This document shows, in pieces, positions 1 to 13,940 of a stretch of 13,940 nt of DNA. The stretch lies in sequence record LR756500.1, one strand, 5' to 3'. Within the stretch, counting starts at the first letter, position 1; the number at the start of each line of letters is the position of its first letter. Under the pieces are notes generated by a model. The model had not been told where the DNA came from. It saw only the letters and a list, made by a program, of their open reading frames with translations, and ran no database searches. The position numbers and the translations under genes are program-made.

Positions 1-423
1 AAACTTTTCTAATGCATCTTTTTTACATAAATTTATTATATATGTTGTCATACATCTTTTATAATTAACCCAAGCTTTTCTATTATTATTTTTTGGTTTA
101 ATTGGTTTAGTTAATTGGGCTAATGGTTTAACTTCAATAATATATTGAACTATGATATCATCCTTTTTAATTTTTGCGTAAAAATCTGGATAATAATGAT
201 GTATTTTTTTATCTAATATATTATAATATGGTATCTTAAATGGTTCAGAAGACCATAACAAAACATCTGGATGTTTATCTAGATAAATACAAAACTTTTT
301 TTCCCAAGAAGATCTATAAATTACTGGTAAAGGACCTACATATTTAGCCTTTTCATTAATTTCATAATAACCTTGTTTATAAAAAGATTTTTTACTAGGT
401 TTTAAATTTTTAATATTCATCAT
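1..423 (-). CDS. gp4: Head completion nuclease, T4 gp4-like (TnsA-N/PD-(D/E)XK fold); runs off the window edge (3'-truncated)
   Basis: Not in the ORF track; translated by hand from ATG ATG at 423/420: (M)MNIKNLKPSKKSFYKQGYY...YVGPLPVIYRSSWEKKFCIYLDKHPDVLLWSSEPFKIPYYNILDKKIHHYYPDFYAKIKK...YIIEVKPLAQL...KKDALEKF. Open to base 1. YRSSWE, WSSE, IPY, H.Y.PDF and IEVKP are gp4-family motifs. Confidence 0.88.
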   Translation of the reverse strand, partial: MMNIKNLKPSKKSFYKQGYYEINEKAKYVGPLPVIYRSSWEKKFCIYLDKHPDVLLWSSEPFKIPYYNILDKKIHHYYPDFYAKIKKDDIIVQYIIEVKPLAQLTKPIKPKNNNRKAWVNYKRCMTTYIINLCKKDALEKF

Positions 424-429
424 ATATTT

Positions 430-437
430 TATATATA
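430..437 (-). promoter_or_regulatory. ATATATA motif upstream of gp4; candidate late promoter core
   Basis: Minus strand reads TTGTATATATAAAATATATG-ATG directly after the terminator. The same core precedes three other genes in the late block. Confidence 0.4.
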
Positions 438-438
438 C

Positions 439-473
439 AAACAATAAAATGGAGATAATTTTAACTATCTCCC
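439..473 (-). terminator. Rho-independent terminator after the gp55/endonuclease unit
   Basis: Minus strand: GGAGATA-GTTAAAAT-TATCTCC (arms at 451-457 and 466-472) followed by ATTTTATTGTTT. It lies about 18 nt downstream of the stop at 491. Confidence 0.75.
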
Positions 474-490
474 TTTATAATTAATCAATA

Positions 491-516
491 TTAAATACTA
501 TAGATTTCTGCATTAT
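491..516. repeat. 26-bp direct repeat, copy 1 (3' end of the endonuclease ORF)
   Basis: ttaaatactatagatttctgcattat matches 2153-2178 at 25 of 26 positions. Confidence 0.95.
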
Positions 517-2104
517 ATTCATATTTAAAATTTCCTGTTCCAAAACATCTATAATATCCTTTATCATGCATTACATCAACTCCAGTCATTAAAGGATCTG
601 CTCCTTCTCTAACCAATTTATCCTTTCTAAACTTGAACCTATTCTCCCTAATTCCATCTACTACCCACCAATAATTTAAACCAGTATGCCCTATATATTT
701 AAAACCTAATTTTGTATATAAATTATCTTGCTCATTTGGTGTCCAATCACAATCAGCATAACTAATAACTCGATTCGGTTCNNNNNNNNNNNNNNNNNNN
801 NNNNNNNNCTTACTAGCACCTCCGATAACTGAGGTATTTAATTTATTAGTAAATCTCATTAATTCATACTTATTATCTTCTGCTTTTTGTCCTAGATTTT
901 TTCTCAACTTACCAAAGGTCATTAATGATACTAACTCATCATTGTAATATAAACCTAATTTAACAGCAGCATTAACATTACCTTGTAAATGGTTCATATT
1001 TAAAAACTCTCGACTATCACTAGAGGACACCTTTTTAATTGTACATTTTCGTGCATAAATACTTTTTTTATTTTTATTTAAAAGATTTAAAATTCTTGAC
1101 TTAACTATATCTTGTTTATTTACACATGAATCTTCCCATATATGTACCAATTTAATGCCCTTAGTTTTAGCTAAAGATGTTTTATTTAAATGGTAATCTT
1201 TAGGTTTTTCTAATTCAGAGTGCCAATAAACTCCATTAAATTCAAATCCTATTTTATTATCAGGAATATAAATATCTATCTCTTTACCATTTAAAATTGT
1301 TCTATCGCGTAAAATATATTTTATATCTAAATTATCTAATATTTCAGTAAAATGTCTTTCTAATCCAATATTAGAATTTGGATTATATGGAGTACATAAA
1401 ATACAAGAATCTATATTATTTGATAATCTATAATTTAATTTTAAATATGAAATTTCATATTCTTTTTTACATTTTTCACAATATAATTTAACTAAACCTT
1501 TATTAAATTTTTTAGTTGTTCCTATACTATAATTTTTAACATCTAATAAATATTTATCTTTTAAATTATTTACTATTTTATTAGTTTTTTTATCTTTTAT
1601 ATTATTAATTATAGTTTTATTTTTCCATGGATTATCTTTACCATATTTATTTATACATGTATTTTTAAATTTATTTGATATTTCTTTAGATTGTAAACTG
1701 TGTTCAACTCCATATCTTTCAACTCTAGTAATTTTCATTTTTTCTTGTACATTACTAAGTTGTGCTACATTTTCAACTCCATATTTTTCAATATTTGTAG
1801 TTTTAGTTTTTTCAAGCTTTGATATCAATATACATTCTCTAGAACATTCCTTTAAATATCCTTTAGATATACTAATAAATCTAGAATTTGGAATTATATT
1901 ACTACAATATTTACAAGTAGGTTTACTTGATATATTATTAATCCAATGATAAGCTTTCTGCCTAAATGAATATGACTTAATATTATTAATTAAGTCATAT
2001 TCATTTATATGTTTTATTACTTCAGGATAATGTAAAGTTAAATATTCTACAGAAAGCCTTTTATATAAAAGTTTATTATTTAAAAAAAATAAATTTCTTA
2101 ACAT
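491..2104 (-). CDS. Putative free-standing homing-endonuclease-like protein: Cys motifs, 23-aa repeats, PD-(D/E)XK/Vsr-like nuclease and C-terminal GNAT (Mom-like) domain, 537 aa
   Basis: CKYC...CSREC and CEKC...CILC motifs; three KYG/RYG repeats; EIDIYIPDNKIGFEFNGVYWHS...HIWED nuclease motif; C-terminal YELMRF..VIGGASK...VISYAD...LYTKLGFKYIG. 27 N at 782-808 keep the frame. Confidence 0.72.
   Translation of the reverse strand: MLRNLFFLNNKLLYKRLSVEYLTLHYPEVIKHINEYDLINNIKSYSFRQKAYHWINNISSKPTCKYCSNIIPNSRFISISKGYLKECSRECILISKLEKTKTTNIEKYGVENVAQLSNVQEKMKITRVERYGVEHSLQSKEISNKFKNTCINKYGKDNPWKNKTIINNIKDKKTNKIVNNLKDKYLLDVKNYSIGTTKKFNKGLVKLYCEKCKKEYEISYLKLNYRLSNNIDSCILCTPYNPNSNIGLERHFTEILDNLDIKYILRDRTILNGKEIDIYIPDNKIGFEFNGVYWHSELEKPKDYHLNKTSLAKTKGIKLVHIWEDSCVNKQDIVKSRILNLLNKNKKSIYARKCTIKKVSSSDSREFLNMNHLQGNVNAAVKLGLYYNDELVSLMTFGKLRKNLGQKAEDNKYELMRFTNKLNTSVIGGASKXXXXXXXXXEPNRVISYADCDWTPNEQDNLYTKLGFKYIGHTGLNYWWVVDGIRENRFKFRKDKLVREGADPLMTGVDVMHDKGYYRCFGTGNFKYEYNAEIYSI
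1604..1810 (-). repeat. Three tandem 23-aa (69-nt) repeats inside the endonuclease
   Basis: aa 99-167: KTKTTNIEKYGVENVAQLSNVQE / KMKITRVERYGVEHSLQSKEISN / KFKNTCINKYGKDNPWKNKTIIN. The sequence ttcaactccatat recurs at 1703 and 1772, 69 nt apart. Confidence 0.85.
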
Positions 2105-2108
2105 TATT

Positions 2109-2138
2109 TATTGTATTTACATTATATGAAATACAATA
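2109..2138 (-). promoter_or_regulatory. Hairpin immediately upstream of the endonuclease start codon
   Basis: Perfect 10-bp inverted repeat TATTGTATTT/AAATACAATA (2129-2138 and 2109-2118) ending 4 nt before the ATG at 2104. Confidence 0.6.
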
Positions 2139-2152
2139 CAAATGTTTAAAAA

Positions 2153-2178
2153 TTAAATACTATAAATTTCTGCATTAT
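2153..2178. repeat. 26-bp direct repeat, copy 2 (3' end of gp55)
   Basis: ttaaatactataaatttctgcattat. The only difference from copy 1 is a synonymous Ile codon (ATT vs ATC). Confidence 0.95.
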
Positions 2179-2527
2179 CACCACCATCTAAACTAAATGT
2201 GCCTGCATACTTTTTAGGATAAATGGTATTCCACCCCTTAGCGAAACCCTTTTTTATAATTTCAGTATAATAAGCAAAAGCATTTTTAGATTTTTCTGGA
2301 TCAAAACTATTCCAGTATTTTAATAAATCTAAATGAGCAAATGACATGCAATCTTTTCTATCTTCTGGATTTTTATATTGCATTCTTCGCGATACTCTTG
2401 TTGTTAATAATATAAGCATATTTTGAGCAGGAGTTGTTAATTTTCCTTGTCCTTTTGACTTAACTATTTCTTCATACAAATCTTTATTTTTAAGATAAAT
2501 ATTATCTTTAAATTTATTTTTTATCAT
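2153..2527 (-). CDS. gp55: Late-transcription sigma factor, T4 gp55-like, 124 aa
   Basis: YLKNKDLYEEI...GKLT...DRKDCMSFAHLDLLKYWNSFDPEKSKNAFAYYTEII matches the gp55-family N(F)DPEKS.NAFAYFTQI motif. Context is T4-like. Confidence 0.85.
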   Translation of the reverse strand: MIKNKFKDNIYLKNKDLYEEIVKSKGQGKLTTPAQNMLILLTTRVSRRMQYKNPEDRKDCMSFAHLDLLKYWNSFDPEKSKNAFAYYTEIIKKGFAKGWNTIYPKKYAGTFSLDGGDNAEIYSI

Positions 2528-2548: not shown

Positions 2549-4402
2549 TTATGCTATTTTTAAATTTTTCTTAACCAACATTTTAACAGGTTTACCTTGT
2601 GATTCAATTACTTTAACTTTGTCAGTATCACCTGATGTTGTATAATCGACTGCATATACGTATACTGTATCACCTACTTTAAATCCAAGCTCAGGTTTTA
2701 AAAGAGTTGCTTCAACATATCCTTGATCTTCTAAACTTTTTGCCTCAGATACATTACCTAGTTGTTGATAAACGTGTTGTAATTTAATTTCTTTATCTTT
2801 CAATTCTTCATCTAAAAGTTTAATAGCTTCAAATAAAGGTTCTCTATTTACAGCTAATTTTGTTGTTTTTTCTAATTCAGATTTTTTCTCTTGTAAGAAA
2901 TTAATTTTATCTATTAAATCACTTTTTTCAATTTCTAATTTAGTTCTAATTTTATTTTCTTCATTTAATTGTTCATGAATAGATTTAGAAATATCAAAAT
3001 TAACCATTTCCTTAACTAAAAGTTTTGCATCTTCTGCGCTTTCAGCCTTAATCAATTCATTTTTTTTCATTGAAGGATTAATCCTATTAACATATAATGT
3101 ATTATCTAATTTAATTAAATTAACCATAACACCTTCATTAATTTTAGAAGAAATGCTAGTTATAAAATCTAATTCTATAATTGTATCAAACTGTTCAACT
3201 AAATACATTAATTGATCAATTTTATACATTTCATCTAAATGAAAAAATCTTGATCTAATTAGATGATTTCTAAAACTTTCACCATTTTTATGATCTACGT
3301 TTTTTCCATTAATTTTAACAGTACCATCTGTTATAGAAATTTCTAATGAATTTTTGTCTTCGAATAAAATAAAACTATTATCTAAAATTTTAAAACTTTG
3401 AAAAGATTTATTAATATTATATAATGTTGGAGATATTTGTGTTGTTTCTTCTATACTATCATTTGATAATGTATAAAATTTATTGCCTAGAGCAAATGTA
3501 ATAGATTTATTTTTTTCATTTACTTCTACTGGTGAATATACTTTTGATACTTTTCCTTCTTCATTACTAATTGTAACTTTTTTATCATTAGAATATGCGT
3601 TAAGAATTACTTTAATTAAAGGTACCCATGAATGTTTTTCTAAAATATAATTTAATCCTTCTGTAATTTCTTTTTCATCTTTTTTAATTAAAAATTCTAA
3701 ATCATTAATTACACTTGAGTAGTATTTTGAATCTTTATTATTTAATGCATATAATGCATTAGAAAGTGCAGCTTTAAATTTATTGTTTTCGAAAATATCT
3801 CTCATTTCACCAATAAATTCTGAAACATTAATTAATTGATTATGAGTTGCTAATTCTTGTAACAACATACTTCCATAATAGAATTCAGGATTACTTTTAA
3901 TATCAGCAATATTTAATCTTTCTGTTAATTTAGCTTTAAGATTTAAATTTTCTGTTTTGTCTATATCTCTTAAACTACTTTGTAAGTCATTTAATTTAAT
4001 GATATATTTCTCAACAATTTTAACCGCAGTTTGAGCACTATAATTTACTCTAGTTTCATCTCCTGCTATTTTTTCTAAACTTTCCTTTAATGTTTTTAAT
4101 TTTAAAGAAAGAGTTGGAATGTTAAATGCATTATCCATTTTATTTAGTTTATTTTTATTATTTGCATCATAGTAATATAAAGGGTTTTCTGATTTTTTAC
4201 CCCAATAATTTTCAACGGCATATATAGATCTATCTCGAGGAACACCCATTCCTCTTAAGATAGAATATACTTGATTAGGTGATCTATGACCGTTATTAAA
4301 TTGATCAACCATCATTTTAAGATTATCTCTACCATCAACATTTTCATAAGGTATACCACCATTAGTATAAACTTGAGTCCATTCATTGATATCTTTTAAC
4401 AT
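2549..4402 (-). CDS. Hypothetical protein, 617 aa, with C-terminal coiled coil and small beta domain; possibly a virion protein
   Basis: Long ORF with an A-rich leader. Heptad-like K/E/L-rich stretch near aa 475-550 and a terminal GFKVGDTVYV...KVKVI segment. No catalytic motif recognised. Confidence 0.8.
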   Translation of the reverse strand: MLKDINEWTQVYTNGGIPYENVDGRDNLKMMVDQFNNGHRSPNQVYSILRGMGVPRDRSIYAVENYWGKKSENPLYYYDANNKNKLNKMDNAFNIPTLSLKLKTLKESLEKIAGDETRVNYSAQTAVKIVEKYIIKLNDLQSSLRDIDKTENLNLKAKLTERLNIADIKSNPEFYYGSMLLQELATHNQLINVSEFIGEMRDIFENNKFKAALSNALYALNNKDSKYYSSVINDLEFLIKKDEKEITEGLNYILEKHSWVPLIKVILNAYSNDKKVTISNEEGKVSKVYSPVEVNEKNKSITFALGNKFYTLSNDSIEETTQISPTLYNINKSFQSFKILDNSFILFEDKNSLEISITDGTVKINGKNVDHKNGESFRNHLIRSRFFHLDEMYKIDQLMYLVEQFDTIIELDFITSISSKINEGVMVNLIKLDNTLYVNRINPSMKKNELIKAESAEDAKLLVKEMVNFDISKSIHEQLNEENKIRTKLEIEKSDLIDKINFLQEKKSELEKTTKLAVNREPLFEAIKLLDEELKDKEIKLQHVYQQLGNVSEAKSLEDQGYVEATLLKPELGFKVGDTVYVYAVDYTTSGDTDKVKVIESQGKPVKMLVKKNLKIA

Positions 4403-4436: not shown

Positions 4437-5672
4437 TTATTTATTCATTTTATTGATATTACACCAATANNNNNNNNNNNNNNNNNNNNNCTTATCTGTA
4501 TCAAGTGGCATACTATAATCGCCCATGAATTGTTTGTAAATATTTATAGCACTATTTATGTCTCGATTTAAATCATTTCCACAATCACATATGTACTGTC
4601 TATCACTTAAATCCAAATCATAATTAATACCTCCACACTTACAACACGTTTTTGAAGTCCATGCTTCATTAACTTTTATAACTTCATTACCCTTTAACTT
4701 ATTCTTATACTCTAAAAGGTGTATAAAAGTTTGCAAATTCCAATTATTCTGCATTTGCCTATTCAAACCCTTAAAATCTGACTTTATATTTTTCTTTAAA
4801 TTCGTTAACTCGCCTATTAAAATCGTTTTATTTTGTTTAGATAAATCTTTACTTACCTTTTGTAAAATTAAATTAGTCTGTGTCTTCTTTTTAGAATAAA
4901 CTTTCTTTAATTTCCTATTTATTTTCTTAAATTTTTTACTTCCCTTCTTTTTAGTATCCCTTTTTGATTTTAATTCATCAATTCTTTTATCTAAAAACTT
5001 TTGATTTTTACTTAAATATTTTGAACTATAAACTAATCCTTTATTATTTTCAACATCATAAACAGCTAACAAATTCTTTTTACCTAAATCAATACTCAAA
5101 ACTTTATTTACATCTATATCCTTTAATTTATCTTCTTTCTTTTCATAAATTATAGAAGCATAATATTTATCATCTTTCTTATAAATCTTTAACTGCTTAA
5201 TTTCTGATTCTTTAGTTTTACTTCTCAAACAAATTAAATGTTTAATTTGCTCTGTATAATCAAGTTTTATTTCTAATTTTCTATAATTTGAATATGATAT
5301 TTTTAAAATATTTTCTTTAATAATAAAATCTTGAGTGTATGATAAAGTGAAAAAATAATCTTTACCTCTAAATTTAGGTGGGTTAGGATTTAAATCTTTG
5401 TTATTTTTAATTAATTTAAAGAAAATAGAATAGTTATTATGCAGAGTCCTTAATATTTCCTTTTTAATATCAAATGTTAAATAATCTGATTTATAATCTT
5501 TTAATTCTTTTTGTTGTTTATAATAAGAAATAAATGTTTTATTTTTTTCATAATGTTCTTTTAATTTACTCAAAAAATGATTATATAATAAACGTCCGTC
5601 ATTAGATATTGAATCAATGATAGAGTGTTGTTCATTATTTAATTTTAATTGTATTTTAAAAGTTAATAACAT
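4437..5672 (-). CDS. tnpB: TnpB-family RNA-guided endonuclease (IS200/IS605/IS607 OrfB, Cas12f-like), 411 aa
   Basis: N-terminal LTFKIQLKLNNEQ...R.LYN; RuvC-I SIDLGKKNL; RuvC-II ILIGELTNL; W....FIHLLEYK; Zn ribbon TSKTCCKCG...YICDCG; RuvC-III RDINSAINI. Confidence 0.93.
   Translation of the reverse strand: MLLTFKIQLKLNNEQHSIIDSISNDGRLLYNHFLSKLKEHYEKNKTFISYYKQQKELKDYKSDYLTFDIKKEILRTLHNNYSIFFKLIKNNKDLNPNPPKFRGKDYFFTLSYTQDFIIKENILKISYSNYRKLEIKLDYTEQIKHLICLRSKTKESEIKQLKIYKKDDKYYASIIYEKKEDKLKDIDVNKVLSIDLGKKNLLAVYDVENNKGLVYSSKYLSKNQKFLDKRIDELKSKRDTKKKGSKKFKKINRKLKKVYSKKKTQTNLILQKVSKDLSKQNKTILIGELTNLKKNIKSDFKGLNRQMQNNWNLQTFIHLLEYKNKLKGNEVIKVNEAWTSKTCCKCGGINYDLDLSDRQYICDCGNDLNRDINSAINIYKQFMGDYSMPLDTDKXXXXXXXYWCNINKMNK
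4451..4469 (-). ncRNA. Stem-loop at the tnpB 3' end; candidate part of an omegaRNA/right end
   Basis: Minus strand TATTGGT-GTAAT-ATCAATA pairs fully with one G-U wobble but has an A-C mismatch on the plus strand. TnpB omegaRNAs overlap the ORF 3' end. Full extent is unknown because 4470-4490 is N. Confidence 0.35.
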
Positions 5673-9083: not shown

Positions 9084-10154
9084 TTATTTTTTATAACGAT
9101 TTAATGAATTTTCTGTAATAAAAATGAATTCTGTTTCTTCTCTAAATTCTTTAAGATTATTTGTTCCTGAATAGCTCATAGCACTTTTTAAATAATCTGA
9201 AAAATTTTCTATCCATTGAGATAGTGTGTATTCAACTTCTATTAATTTAATAATACCTTCTGAAGTTTTTAATTTAGTATTACCCATTTCTTTTTGTATT
9301 TCTTTGGTACTCATTCCTCTAAACTTTTTATAAAATTTAGTACCACTTTTTAACATAGCACTATAATGTTCCGTATATTGATCAATTTGATCACCAGGTT
9401 CTGTCCAACTATTATATTTTTTATTTCCTATAAAAGTATTTGCTGCACTTTCTAATGCTTTATTAAATATTGAACCTAACATTACATAATCAGCGCCTAA
9501 TGAAAGAGCTGCAATTACATCAGAATATTTTTTCATTCCACCATCAGCTACTATTTTAGTAGTTAAACAAAATTCTTGTTTATGAATAAAACATTCATTT
9601 ATTAATGAAGCCATCGGATATCCAATTTTTGTTTGTTGTGTAGTTAAACAAGCACCACCAAAGCCTATACCGCATCTTACATAATCAGCGCCTGCTCGTG
9701 ATAATTGTATATATGTACGAGGATTTGCTATATTACCGACCATTAATATAAGCTTATCGGTATATACTCTTTTTGCATGTTCAATTACTATAAGTAATTG
9801 ACTCATATGACCATTAGCTATGTCTATTAATACTTTAATTGGTTTTAAAAAAGTAATTGTATGTTTTAAAAATTTTTCTTCAAAATCTTCTAAACTAAAA
9901 GAATACCAAGTATCTAATTCATTGCAAGTGTTTAAAAAATTATCACTATCTTTTCCTCTTGGTAAAATAGTATTTATACCTAAAGATTTATAAATATTAA
10001 TATTTTTTAAATCTATTACATCATACATAGGTGCTGTAAATAATGGAAGATTTCCATTATCATCATTTATGTTTATTTCACTTCTACTTCTTATACTACT
10101 TGTTATAGCAGGCTCTATAAGTATATCATCAAAATCGAATTTTACGTTTTCCAT
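9084..10154 (-). CDS. guaC: IMPDH/GMPR-family oxidoreductase, most likely GMP reductase, 356 aa
   Basis: FDFDDILIEP, LFTAPM, IDIANGH, VGNIA, catalytic loop GIGFGGACLTT..TKIGYP, IVADGG, ALSLGADYVMLGS, FRGMST...TSEG, SAMSYSG. No CBS domains, and no IMPDH-type Arg-Tyr flap dyad seen. Confidence 0.75.
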   Translation of the reverse strand: MENVKFDFDDILIEPAITSSIRSRSEININDDNGNLPLFTAPMYDVIDLKNINIYKSLGINTILPRGKDSDNFLNTCNELDTWYSFSLEDFEEKFLKHTITFLKPIKVLIDIANGHMSQLLIVIEHAKRVYTDKLILMVGNIANPRTYIQLSRAGADYVRCGIGFGGACLTTQQTKIGYPMASLINECFIHKQEFCLTTKIVADGGMKKYSDVIAALSLGADYVMLGSIFNKALESAANTFIGNKKYNSWTEPGDQIDQYTEHYSAMLKSGTKFYKKFRGMSTKEIQKEMGNTKLKTSEGIIKLIEVEYTLSQWIENFSDYLKSAMSYSGTNNLKEFREETEFIFITENSLNRYKK

Positions 10155-13297: not shown

Positions 13298-13940
13298 TTA
13301 TCCGTTGTTTAATATTTCCTGAAAATATTTAATAGCTTTATCCAATCCTTCATATAAATGTATTTTAGGTTCCCAATTCAATTTTTCTTTAGCTAATGAT
13401 ATATCAGGTTTTCTAACTTTAGGATCATCTTGTGGCAAATCTTTAAATATTAATTTGCCTTTAGTTTCAATTTTTTGCATAACTAAATTTGCTAATTCTT
13501 TTACTGTAAATTCATTAGGATTACCCAAATTAACAGGTCCAATAAAACTATCATCTGATTCCATCATAGCAATTAGACCATTAACCATATCGTCTATATA
13601 ACAAAAACTTCTAGTTTGATGTCCATCTCCGTAAATCGTTATATCTTCTCCTTTTAAAGCTTGTACTATAAAATTTGAAACTACTCTTCCATCCTCTGGA
13701 TCCATCCAAGTGCCATAAGTATTAAATATTCTTACTATTTTAATACGAGTGTTATAAGTTCTATGATGATCCATTAACATAGTTTCTGCAACTCTTTTTC
13801 CCTCATCATAACAAGATCTTATTCCAATAGAATTAACATTACCCCAATATGTTTCAGTTTGAGGATGTTCTAAAGGATCTCCATATATTTCACTAGTAGA
13901 TGTATGTAATAATTTTGCTTTAGTTGACTTTGCTAAATCT
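13298..13940 (-). CDS. NAD-dependent epimerase/dehydratase, UDP-glucuronate decarboxylase (UDP-xylose synthase)-like; 5'-truncated
   Basis: The frame stays open upstream of the track's ATG at 13780: [54 protein letters not shown]. This contains TSE.YGDP, YWGNVN and RSCYDEGKR (YxxxK), followed by [30 protein letters not shown] and [10 protein letters not shown]. Confidence 0.9.

What the first reader, a model, noticed from the sequence alone, without database searches (positions are those of the whole stretch)
520..1372. Nuclease fused to a Mom-like GNAT domain: a possible one-gene cut-and-protect element
Seen: a PD-(D/E)XK/Vsr-like module (aa ~245-345, EIDIYIP..KIGFEFNGVYWH) is followed by ~180 aa containing ELMRF...VIGGASK and ISYAD...LYTKLGFKYIG. 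Established: phage Mu Mom is a GNAT-fold DNA adenine-modifying enzyme. From memory, Mom-like proteins carry a similar S(F/Y)AD...Y...F.Y.G pattern. Inference: this protein may both modify DNA and cut unmodified DNA, acting as a selfish restriction-modification-like unit or a phage-exclusion factor. The GNAT domain could instead be a repurposed DNA-binding module.
Basis: partly seen in the sequence, partly recalled or inferred. Interest (0 to 1): 0.72.

Follow-up and report, generated by a model that had tools for sequence, protein, structure and literature searches.

The report
Hef-type homing endonuclease with Mom domain
This is a mobile "homing" nuclease gene of a very common phage family, inserted at the end of a huge phage's late-transcription gene. 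Its tail end really is related to the DNA-modifying enzyme Mom, but the fusion and the cut-and-protect idea are already published, and the evidence here favours an ordinary selfish nuclease gene.

Summary
ORF 491-2104 (minus strand, 537 aa) carries a Vsr-like/EDxHD nuclease domain (aa 247-343) followed by a GNAT-fold domain (aa 349-530). The nearest relative of that domain, by profile and by fold, is phage Mu Mom. The 27-N gap covers exactly codons 433-441 and is in frame.

The whole protein is a full-length member of the Hef-like homing endonuclease family (phrog_3339, E 4.5e-110). The C-terminal domain family has about 19,000 cluster representatives. Five paralogues sit in this 429-kb phage genome.

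The gene is an insertion. Nine related viral contigs have the late-sigma (gp55-like) gene directly next to the head-closure gene. Here a 1662-bp unit lies between them, bounded by a 30-nt direct repeat that duplicates the gp55-like gene's last codons.

The window's Mom-like domain keeps the equivalents of Mom H58, E108, R111, S124, D149 and Y159 but not the essential R151. Across 112 homologues the Ser and Asp positions vary, while the nuclease residues do not.

Jumbo-phage Mom-nuclease fusions, read as restriction-modification-like, were described by Iyer et al. in 2021. Verdict: a new member of a known kind. What the Mom-like domain does is still untested.

The parts
491..2104 (-). Free-standing Hef-like homing endonuclease gene, 537 aa
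   Evidence: ORF listing and translation. phrog_3339 'homing endonuclease', E 4.5e-110, covering aa 35-531. tblastn matches in 430 phage records, several annotated 'Hef-like homing endonuclease'.
1385..2104 (-). N-terminal region (aa 1-240), the presumed target-reading part. It holds Zn ribbon 1 (C64, C67, C87, C91; nt 1832-1915), three KYG helical repeats (aa ~100-165; nt 1610-1807) and Zn ribbon 2 (C209, C212, C234, C237; nt 1394-1480).
   Evidence: The Cys residues are invariant or nearly so in 33 homologues, yet mean column identity is only 23%. AF2 model pLDDT 88, pTM 0.57, no PDB fold match. Homologues carry Pfam PF24308, or PF14311+PF05265. The DNA-binding role is inferred by analogy with I-Bth0305I and I-TevI.
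1076..1366 (-). Vsr-like / EDxHD nuclease domain (aa 247-343) with E275, D277, E288, N290, H295, H305, K308, E324 and D325
   Evidence: 3r3p (I-Bth0305I), E 5.2e-6. D277, N290 and H295 align with its D196, N208 and H213 (PMC3239194). The seven-residue signature (E275, D277, E288, H295, H305, K308, D325) is intact in 103 of 112 homologues, about 93%.
515..1060 (-). Mom-family GNAT-fold domain (aa 349-530), including an insertion with three short helices (aa ~478-520) rich in invariant basic residues (R489, K494)
782..808 (.). Run of 27 N, equal to codons 433-441 and lying in helix alpha3 of the GNAT domain. Left unfilled.
   Evidence: Codon-aligned by arithmetic. It aligns to exactly nine residues, with no indel, in all 44 homologue domains.
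487..516 (-). Copy B of the 30-nt direct repeat. It supplies the endonuclease ORF's last seven codons (NAEIYSI), its stop codon and a few following bases.
   Evidence: the repeat finder family D3, 28/30 identical, spacing 1662. The 27-mer core occurs only twice in the 429-kb genome. Residues 533-537 are gapped in 35-98 of the 112 homologues, so the ORF runs past the usual family C-terminus.
2149..2178 (-). Copy A of the 30-nt direct repeat: the native 3' end (NAEIYSI, stop) of the gp55-like gene
   Evidence: A C-terminal (G/E)IY(T/S)(I/V)-stop tail is conserved in the gp55-like genes of nine related contigs.
2153..2527 (-). Host gene upstream of the insertion: gp55-like late sigma factor (124 aa)
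   Evidence: phrog_234, E 7.3e-13. In L002-L006 and L010 it lies 2-29 nt from the head-closure gene.
1..444 (-). Host gene downstream of the insertion: head-closure (connector) gene, cut by the window edge
   Evidence: phrog_218, E 5.7e-31. Synteny in nine related contigs.
451..472 (-). Terminator-like hairpin followed by a T run, just after the endonuclease stop codon
   Evidence: z -3.0.
2092..2154 (-). Spacer hairpin whose outer stem pairs across the endonuclease start codon. It may control translation.
   Evidence: Fold energy -15 kcal/mol, z -2.9. Function inferred only.

Best explanation
**What it is.** A free-standing homing endonuclease gene of the Hef / EDxHD (Vsr-like) class, in a roughly 430-kb T4-like huge phage.

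**Insertion.** The 1662-bp repeat unit that holds the gene sits at the very 3' end of the gp55-like late-sigma gene. A copy of that gene's last codons keeps the host gene whole. The endonuclease ORF runs into the second copy and uses its stop codon.

**Inferred way of working.**
- The variable N-terminal array of two zinc ribbons and KYG helical repeats reads a long target in genomes that lack the element.
- The central Vsr-like domain cuts.
- Recombinational repair from the element-bearing genome then copies the gene in.

**The Mom-like domain.** The C-terminal Mom-family GNAT domain is a fixed, strongly conserved part of this endonuclease family. My best reading is that it grips double-stranded DNA in a target-independent way, using the Mom-type cleft and basic helical insertion, perhaps by holding a flipped adenine. 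It would do this without installing a protective mark, and it does not serve to protect self DNA.

**Shown versus inferred.** Shown here: the domain identities, the intact nuclease residues, the insertion polymorphism, the repeat and the copy number. Inferred: cleavage, homing and the role of the Mom-like domain.

**Sub-confidences.** Mobile Hef-type endonuclease gene, about 0.9. Mom-like domain is not a self-protecting modifier, about 0.55-0.6.
For: **Family.**
- Full-length match to phrog_3339, E 4.5e-110.
- 430 phage records hold relatives, several annotated Hef-like.
- Taylor et al. place Hef-type enzymes in the EDxHD family (PMC3239194).
- Hef of phage U5 cuts nrdB (PMC2988022).
- Hef-like genes occur as several free-standing copies in T4-related phages (PMC3296691).

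**Nuclease.** All family-invariant residues are present in the window's protein.

**Mobility.**
- Nine related contigs keep the order orf617 -> gp55-like -> head closure with no endonuclease between the last two.
- A 30-nt repeat (28/30 identical) bounds a 1662-bp unit, and its core is found only twice in 429 kb.
- The duplicated tail is native to gp55-like proteins.
- There are five paralogues in the genome.

**Mom-like domain.**
- Homology and fold are established.
- The R151 equivalent is Asp in the window and is not conserved in the family.
- The S124 equivalent is Ser in only 76% of homologues, and the D149 equivalent is Asp in 82%, against about 93% for the nuclease signature.
- It is the most conserved region: 56% identity to homologues against 48% for the nuclease domain and 22-34% for the N-terminus, and 69-83% against 49-67% among paralogues. 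That speaks against a role in choosing the target.
- Two apparently stand-alone copies turned out to be split endonuclease genes.
Against: **Signs that the domain could still be an enzyme.**
- Many polar residues around the Mom active-site equivalents are invariant in 112/112 homologues: H372, E414, R417 and Y463, plus the G-G-A loop at 428-430 (112, 110 and 110 of 112). That looks more like an enzyme or a specific ligand pocket than a plain DNA clamp.
- The window's own copy and seven paralogues from this phage lineage (the same or a near-identical genome) all keep Ser431 and Asp451.
- An Arg one residue earlier (position 452) in 61 of 112 homologues might stand in for R151 in them.

**Limits of the evidence.**
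- No cleavage, homing or modification data exist for this protein.
- The homologue set was chosen by similarity to the C-terminal domain, which inflates its apparent conservation.
- The hhalign probability is only 49.5%, from low-diversity alignments.
Confidence: 0.6

Rival explanations
1. **Cut-and-protect.** The Mom-like domain is an active adenine modifier that marks the phage's own DNA. The fused nuclease cuts unmarked host DNA or DNA of superinfecting phages. The result would be a one-polypeptide restriction-modification-like or exclusion unit.
For: - The domain is a true Mom relative.
- The window's copy keeps the equivalents of H58, E108, R111, S124, D149 and Y159, as do seven paralogues from this phage lineage.
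- The pocket residues are invariant family-wide.
- The reading was published for jumbo phages (PMC7824862).
- Mom acts on double-stranded DNA and needs only a host-supplied charged tRNA (PMC13219725).
Against: - The essential R151 equivalent is Asp here.
- The Ser and Asp equivalents are lost in 24% and 18% of homologues that still keep the nuclease.
- The gene behaves as an insertion at a conserved gene junction, with a target duplication and five diverged copies. That is homing-gene behaviour.
- In a mixed infection a fused modifier would mark both genomes alike. It could not tell self from target and would work against homing (inference).
- No stand-alone modifier versions were found in the two cases checked.
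Confidence: 0.2
2. **Target-specificity module.** The Mom-like domain has lost catalysis and now reads the DNA sequence of the homing site.
For: - Mom recognises a short sequence context on double-stranded DNA, and its helix-turn-helix-like insertion is modelled in the major groove (PMC13219725).
- An equivalent helical insertion with invariant basic residues is present here.
- Homing endonucleases are built from shuffled DNA-binding modules.
Against: - It is the least variable part of the protein, both between paralogues (69-83% identity, against 49-67% for the nuclease) and across the family.
- Those paralogues sit at different loci and so presumably have different targets. A module that set specificity should differ between them.
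Confidence: 0.1
3. **Dimerisation or other accessory role.** The GNAT domain pairs two nuclease domains for double-strand cleavage, as Mom forms W48-dependent dimers. Alternatively it acylates something other than DNA, such as a tRNA or a protein.
For: - Mom is a tight dimer (PMC13219725).
- I-Bth0305I works as a dimer on a pseudo-palindromic site (PMC3239194).
- GNAT toxins act on tRNA.
Against: - In I-Bth0305I the nuclease domain dimerises on its own.
- Which residue of the window's protein matches Mom W48 is not settled. The single-sequence alignment pairs it with the invariant Phe at position 367, and the profile-profile alignment shifts the register.
- I did not test this.
Confidence: 0.1

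Closest known systems
Hef and Hef-like free-standing homing endonucleases of T4-related and jumbo phages (phage U5 Hef; F-LimIII, VII, VIII and X of LIMEstone1; RaK2, KARL-1 and JC221 annotations; phrog_3339)
   Same: The same full-length architecture. The match runs over aa 35-531 of the family profile, and tblastn alignments reach aa 526-533, so they include the Mom-like domain. Like them, the gene is free-standing, multi-copy and sits next to conserved genes.
   Different: 30-37% identity to cultured-phage members. This copy sits at the gp55-like/head-closure junction and ends inside a duplicated host-gene tail. No biochemistry exists for it. I could not read the original Hef paper (PMC1275590 is not held), so the link to U5 Hef rests on annotations and on Taylor et al. 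2011.
I-Bth0305I, the prototype of the EDxHD (Vsr-like) homing endonuclease family (PDB 3r3p)
   Same: Homologous catalytic domain (E 5.2e-6). The equivalents of D196, N208 and H213 are present.
   Different: I-Bth0305I is intron-encoded, 266 aa long, has NUMOD DNA-binding repeats at its N-terminus and has no Mom-like domain. Its D222 aligns with His305 here.
Phage Mu Mom (PDB 8bv8; Pfam PF25680), a Gly-tRNA(Gly)-dependent adenine N6 modifier
   Same: GNAT fold with an extra helical insertion. It is the best structural and profile match. The equivalents of H58, E108, R111, S124, D149 and Y159 are kept.
   Different: About 17% identity. The R151 equivalent is Asp and the Y59 equivalent is Leu. 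The beta4-alpha3 loop is a glycine-rich V-I-G-G-A-S-K, more like classical CoA-binding GNATs, where Mom has P-R-N-S-E-S-R. The domain is fused behind a nuclease rather than standing alone with a Com-type regulator.
Jumbo-phage Mom-REase fusions described by Iyer, Anantharaman, Krishnan, Burroughs and Aravind 2021 (Viruses 13:63)
   Same: The same architecture in the same kind of genome. The paper also reports multiple copies per phage (five in PA5oct).
   Different: They read the proteins as restriction-plus-protection systems. The insertion polymorphism and residue losses found here favour homing endonuclease genes. The paper does not mention Hef or Vsr.
Fused type IIG/IIL restriction-modification enzymes such as MmeI (from general knowledge)
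   Same: One polypeptide that would both modify and cut, which is the functional analogy behind the cut-and-protect idea.
   Different: Those enzymes carry a SAM-dependent methyltransferase and a target-recognition domain. They are cellular defence genes rather than insertions at phage gene junctions. No homology was tested or is claimed.

Membership tests
Hef-like homing endonucleases (phrog_3339) | End-to-end match to the family profile | tested here: met
   E 4.5e-110, aa 35-531 on profile positions 43-534 of 536.
EDxHD / Vsr-like homing endonucleases | Vsr-like catalytic domain with the conserved acidic and histidine residues | tested here: met
   3r3p, E 5.2e-6. E275, D277, E288, N290, H295, H305, K308 and D325 are all present and are conserved in 100 or more of the 112 homologues.
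Homing endonuclease genes in general | Presence/absence polymorphism at a conserved site in related genomes | tested here: met
   Nine related contigs lack the gene between the gp55-like and head-closure genes. A 30-nt duplication bounds the 1662-bp unit.
Homing endonuclease genes in general | Site-specific cleavage of the element-free allele, followed by gene conversion | not testable with these tools
   Needs a cleavage assay on the element-free junction and a co-infection or plasmid homing assay.
Mom family (Pfam PF25680 / phrog_1384) | Significant match to a Mom family profile | tested here: met
   phrog_1384, E 2.9e-7. PF25680 is recorded on many homologues, though not on the window's own database entry. 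hhalign against the Mom family alignment gives E 1.7e-4, probability 49.5%.
Mom family (Pfam PF25680 / phrog_1384) | GNAT fold with Mom as the closest solved structure, including the extra insertion between the last strands | tested here: met
Mom family (Pfam PF25680 / phrog_1384) | Catalytic residues R111, S124 and D149 | tested here: met
   R417, S431 and D451 align with them. Family-wide, R is kept in 112/112, S in 85/112 and D in 92/112.
Mom family (Pfam PF25680 / phrog_1384) | Essential R151 | tested here: not met
   It aligns with D453. In the family this position reads S 58, R 32, D 17. R151 is invariant in the 29 Mom sequences aligned.
Mom family (Pfam PF25680 / phrog_1384) | Gly-tRNA(Gly)-dependent modification of adenine N6 in double-stranded DNA | not testable with these tools
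   Needs the coupled in vitro assay and nucleoside LC-MS of PMC13219725.
Restriction-modification-like cut-and-protect unit | The modification made by the protein blocks its own nuclease, and unmodified DNA is cut | not testable with these tools
   No data. The indirect evidence (insertion behaviour, residue losses) leans against it.

The most novel reading that the evidence does not exclude
The Mom-like domain of Hef-type homing endonucleases is an active acyl- or aminoacyl-transferase that writes a mark on adenine at or near the enzyme's own site. Thousands of phage homing endonucleases would then be single-chain modify-and-cut enzymes, for example limiting self-cleavage or off-target cleavage epigenetically. 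The invariant H372, E414, R417, Y463 and G-G-A pocket, and the Ser and Asp kept in this lineage, leave this reading open.
Probability: 0.2. Interest if true: 0.75.

Novelty: new member of a known kind. Interest (0 to 1): 0.3.

Why it matters
For this window it matters little. The gene can be annotated with confidence as a Hef-like (EDxHD) free-standing homing endonuclease carrying a C-terminal Mom-family domain.

The wider point is that two literatures describe the same proteins without citing each other. The homing-endonuclease literature calls them 'Hef-like', and Iyer et al. call them 'momylation plus restriction'. The domain family has about 19,000 representative clusters, and its role has never been tested.

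Mom's donor (Gly-tRNA(Gly)), its structure and its essential residues are now known (2026). A direct test of whether these domains still modify DNA is therefore feasible. This copy offers a clean predicted target, namely the element-free gp55-like/head-closure junction.

Tried and rejected
**Searches that found nothing.**
- NCBIfam scan of the whole protein: no family.
- phmmer of the C-terminal domain against PDB sequences: only chance hits.
- hhalign against the single Mu Mom sequence: weak, E 0.044. It improved to 1.7e-4 with a Mom family alignment.
- The N-terminal 245 aa modelled well locally (pLDDT 88), but Foldseek found no PDB match at E <= 0.001. I left it as 'zinc ribbons plus helical repeats, fold not placed'.

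**Leads that did not hold.**
- Stand-alone versions of the Mom-like domain: 308 short proteins were found. The two I checked on longer contigs are split endonuclease genes, with the nuclease part just upstream.
- I looked for the same tail duplication at the other four paralogues in the genome. None was evident from their C-termini. The repeat finder was not run on them.
- The TAA flagged in one paralogue is most likely its natural stop codon, because a 567-aa ORF is intact.

**Tools or papers not available.**
I used a homologue instead, which confirmed the Pfam name 'PF25680 Mom'.
- The original Hef paper (PMC1275590 / PMID 16257983) is not held.

**Steps deliberately not taken.**
- I ran no complex-prediction job, because I make no binding claim.
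- I did not fetch the near-identical record LR756500.1 or the window's own database protein, so as not to read the masked letters. Alignment tools showed what other genomes' homologues hold in those columns, and I transferred none of it to the window.
Full report
**Setting.** The window has 21-27% G+C, and every large ORF lies on the minus strand. The neighbouring genes are those of a T4-like phage:
- a DnaB-like helicase;
- SbcC- and SbcD-like gp46/gp47;
- a gp55-like late sigma factor;
- a tail-sheath stabiliser;
- a head-closure protein;
- a TnpB-like transposase.

The window is bases 33558-47497 of a 429,198-base virus record rated 96% complete. A 462-kb uncultured phage record, LR756500.1, encodes the same protein at 98.3% identity. 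I did not open that record, because it is in effect another copy of this genome and the gap letters are not to be looked up.

**The observation.** The finding's coordinates 520-1372 are aa 245-528 of ORF 491-2104 (minus strand, 537 aa), and every quoted motif is there. The 27 N at 782-808 are exactly codons 433-441. The frame is open on both sides. All 44 aligned homologue domains from other contigs have nine residues in those columns with no indel. The database entry flagged as the window's own protein also has 537 residues. The stretch is therefore continuous and in frame, and it behaves like a mask of exact length rather than an estimated gap. I left it as X throughout.

**What the protein is.** The whole protein matches PHROG 3339 'homing endonuclease' from end to end (E 4.5e-110, aa 35-531). 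tblastn finds relatives in 430 phage records. These are mostly jumbo and T4-like phages of Vibrio, Campylobacter, Klebsiella, Acinetobacter and others, and several are annotated 'Hef-like homing endonuclease'.

The central part (aa 247-338) matches the crystal-structure sequence of I-Bth0305I, the prototype EDxHD/Vsr-like homing endonuclease (3r3p, E 5.2e-6). The authors of that structure had already placed Hef-type phage endonucleases in the family (PMC3239194). In 112 homologues from other contigs, E275, D277, E288, N290, H295, H305, K308 and D325 are each conserved in 100 or more. The seven-residue signature scored is intact in about 93%, and the window's protein has every one of these residues. 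The nuclease is therefore predicted to be active.

The N-terminal 240 residues hold two four-cysteine ribbons and three KYG helical repeats. The cysteines are invariant or nearly so, but the rest is only 23% conserved. The model is locally confident but has no PDB match. By analogy with I-Bth0305I and I-TevI, I take this variable array to be the part that reads the target. That is an inference.

**The C-terminal domain is a Mom relative.** Several lines of evidence agree.
- Taken alone, aa 345-537 hit PHROG 1384 'Mom-like DNA modification protein' (E 2.9e-7).
- Many homologues carry a precomputed hit to Pfam PF25680. That family covers all Mu Mom relatives and is named 'Mom'.
- With a 45-sequence alignment, the domain models at pLDDT 92.8.
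- Foldseek puts the Mom crystal structure 8bv8 first at E 6e-8 (TM 0.61/0.52), and ordinary GNAT acetyltransferases follow at 2e-4 and weaker.
- Profile-profile comparison with 29 Mom sequences gives E 1.7e-4, with probability only 49.5% because both alignments have low diversity.

That profile-profile alignment pairs residues as follows:

| Window residue | Mu Mom residue |
|---|---|
| H372 | H58 |
| E414 | E108 |
| R417 | R111 |
| S431 | S124 |
| D451 | D149 |
| D453 | R151 |
| Y463 | Y159 |

According to the 2026 study of Mom, R111, S124 and R151 are essential, D149 is important, the helical insertion is required, and the donor is Gly-tRNA(Gly) acting on double-stranded DNA (PMC13219725). 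The window's domain thus keeps most of the Mom active site but not R151.

**The gene is an insertion.** Nine related viral contigs (L002-L010) keep the order orf617, gp55-like gene, head-closure gene.
- In six of them the last two genes lie 2-29 bases apart.
- None has an endonuclease between them.
- In the window the same two genes are separated by the endonuclease gene.

A 30-nt direct repeat (28/30 identical) lies at 487-516 and 2149-2178, with a spacing of 1662 bases. Its 27-nt core occurs only at these two places in the 429-kb genome. The repeat consists of the last seven codons (NAEIYSI), the stop codon and a few following bases of the gp55-like gene. A (G/E)IY(T/S)(I/V)-stop tail is conserved in the gp55-like genes of all nine relatives, so this tail belongs to the host gene.

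The endonuclease ORF reads into the second copy and ends there. Its last five residues extend beyond the usual C-terminus of its family. This is what one expects of a homing cassette that lands in the end of an essential gene and carries a replacement end for it.

The genome holds five paralogues of the nuclease-plus-Mom part, 61-71% identical to this one. All are intact ORFs packed between other genes. Multiple free-standing Hef-like copies are described for T4-related phages (PMC3296691). Hef of phage U5 is reported to cut nrdB (PMC2988022).

**What the Mom-like domain does.** This is the open part, and the evidence pulls in two directions.

Against a Mom-type protective enzyme:
- The R151 equivalent is Asp here and is not conserved in the family.
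- The S124 equivalent is Asn, Asp or Gly in 24% of homologues, and the D149 equivalent is replaced in 18%. Those same proteins keep their nuclease residues.
- A fused modifier acting in a mixed infection would mark donor and recipient genomes alike, which would hinder homing. This is an inference.

Against a plain target-reading module:
- The domain is the best conserved part of the protein. Identity to homologues is 56%, against 48% for the nuclease and 22-34% for the N-terminus.
- Among paralogues the figures are 69-83% against 49-67%.
- The homologue set was picked by similarity to this domain, which inflates its figure somewhat.

For a specific pocket:
- H372, E414, R417, Y463 and the G-G-A loop at 428-430 are invariant or nearly so.
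- R489 and K494 in the helical insertion are also invariant.
- The window's copy and seven paralogues from this phage lineage all keep Ser431 and Asp451.

My best reading, at about 0.55-0.6, is a target-independent DNA-engaging module derived from Mom, which may hold a flipped adenine and which helps the nuclease act. I give an active modify-and-cut enzyme about 0.2.

**Comparison with what is known.** The architecture is published. Their text mentions neither Hef nor Vsr. The homing-endonuclease papers that I searched for these terms mention neither Mom nor acetyltransferase, so the two descriptions have not been joined in the library I could search.

The domain family is very large: 19,210 representative clusters at E <= 0.001 and 9,050 at 1e-30. 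In the best 150 the domain ends within a few residues of the C-terminus, typically in proteins of about 430-700 aa. Two apparently stand-alone copies proved to be split endonuclease genes.

**Verdict.** The gene is a new member of a known kind, an ordinary though nicely documented homing endonuclease insertion. The general question of what the Mom-like domain does in these enzymes is real and can now be tested, but it is not specific to this window.

Noticed in passing
window 1963-2007: A perfect 19-bp inverted repeat with a 7-nt loop lies inside the endonuclease's 5' coding region (aa ~33-47). The RNA fold is -21.3 kcal/mol, z -9.3. The arms occur nowhere else in the 429-kb genome. Its purpose is unknown. 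It could be a brake on translation or transcription of the endonuclease, or a recognition hairpin for another element.
   Followed up: partly
window 2092-2154 (minus strand): A hairpin in the 48-nt spacer between the gp55-like stop codon and the endonuclease start codon pairs across the start codon (-15 kcal/mol, z -2.9). It resembles the translational control reported for T4 homing endonuclease genes; that comparison is from memory.
   Followed up: partly
window 4437-5672 (minus strand): A TnpB-like (IS200/IS605 OrfB-type) transposase gene of 411 aa (phrog_506, E 7.5e-60). It has its own 21-N masked stretch near the 3' end. It is a second kind of mobile nuclease gene, about 2.3 kb from the homing endonuclease.
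   Followed up: partly
G000:C1 25628-26524, 52214-53101, 63048-63935, 207513-208391 (loci L013-L016): Four further intact paralogues of the endonuclease (478-647 aa), each packed between same-strand genes and sometimes overlapping them by a few bases. Their C-termini differ and show no obvious host-gene tail duplication.
   Followed up: partly
L007 and L008 4346-4882; L009 3749-4628: In three of the nine related contigs the gp55-like and head-closure genes are 0.5-0.9 kb apart instead of adjacent. No similarity to the endonuclease was found there, so something else may occupy the same junction.
   Followed up: no
proteins P0011 (936 aa), P0119 (753 aa), P0032 (582 aa): Unusual relatives. P0011 has two copies of the Mom-like domain (aa 259-438 and 755-934). 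P0119 has a GIY-YIG homing endonuclease part in front of a complete Hef-like protein. P0032 has NUMOD-type modules and a Mom-like domain but no recognisable Vsr-like signature.
   Followed up: partly
window 9084-10154 and 13298-13939 (minus strand): Auxiliary metabolic genes in the phage: a dehydrogenase-family gene (phrog_9582, E 2.3e-54) that by eye looks like IMP dehydrogenase or GMP reductase, and a nucleotide-sugar epimerase/decarboxylase-like gene (phrog_540, E 2e-38) cut by the window edge.
   Followed up: no
window 2549-4402 (minus strand): A 617-aa ORF with no PHROG match is nevertheless conserved and syntenic upstream of the gp55-like gene in all nine related contigs (26-44% identity).
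   Followed up: no
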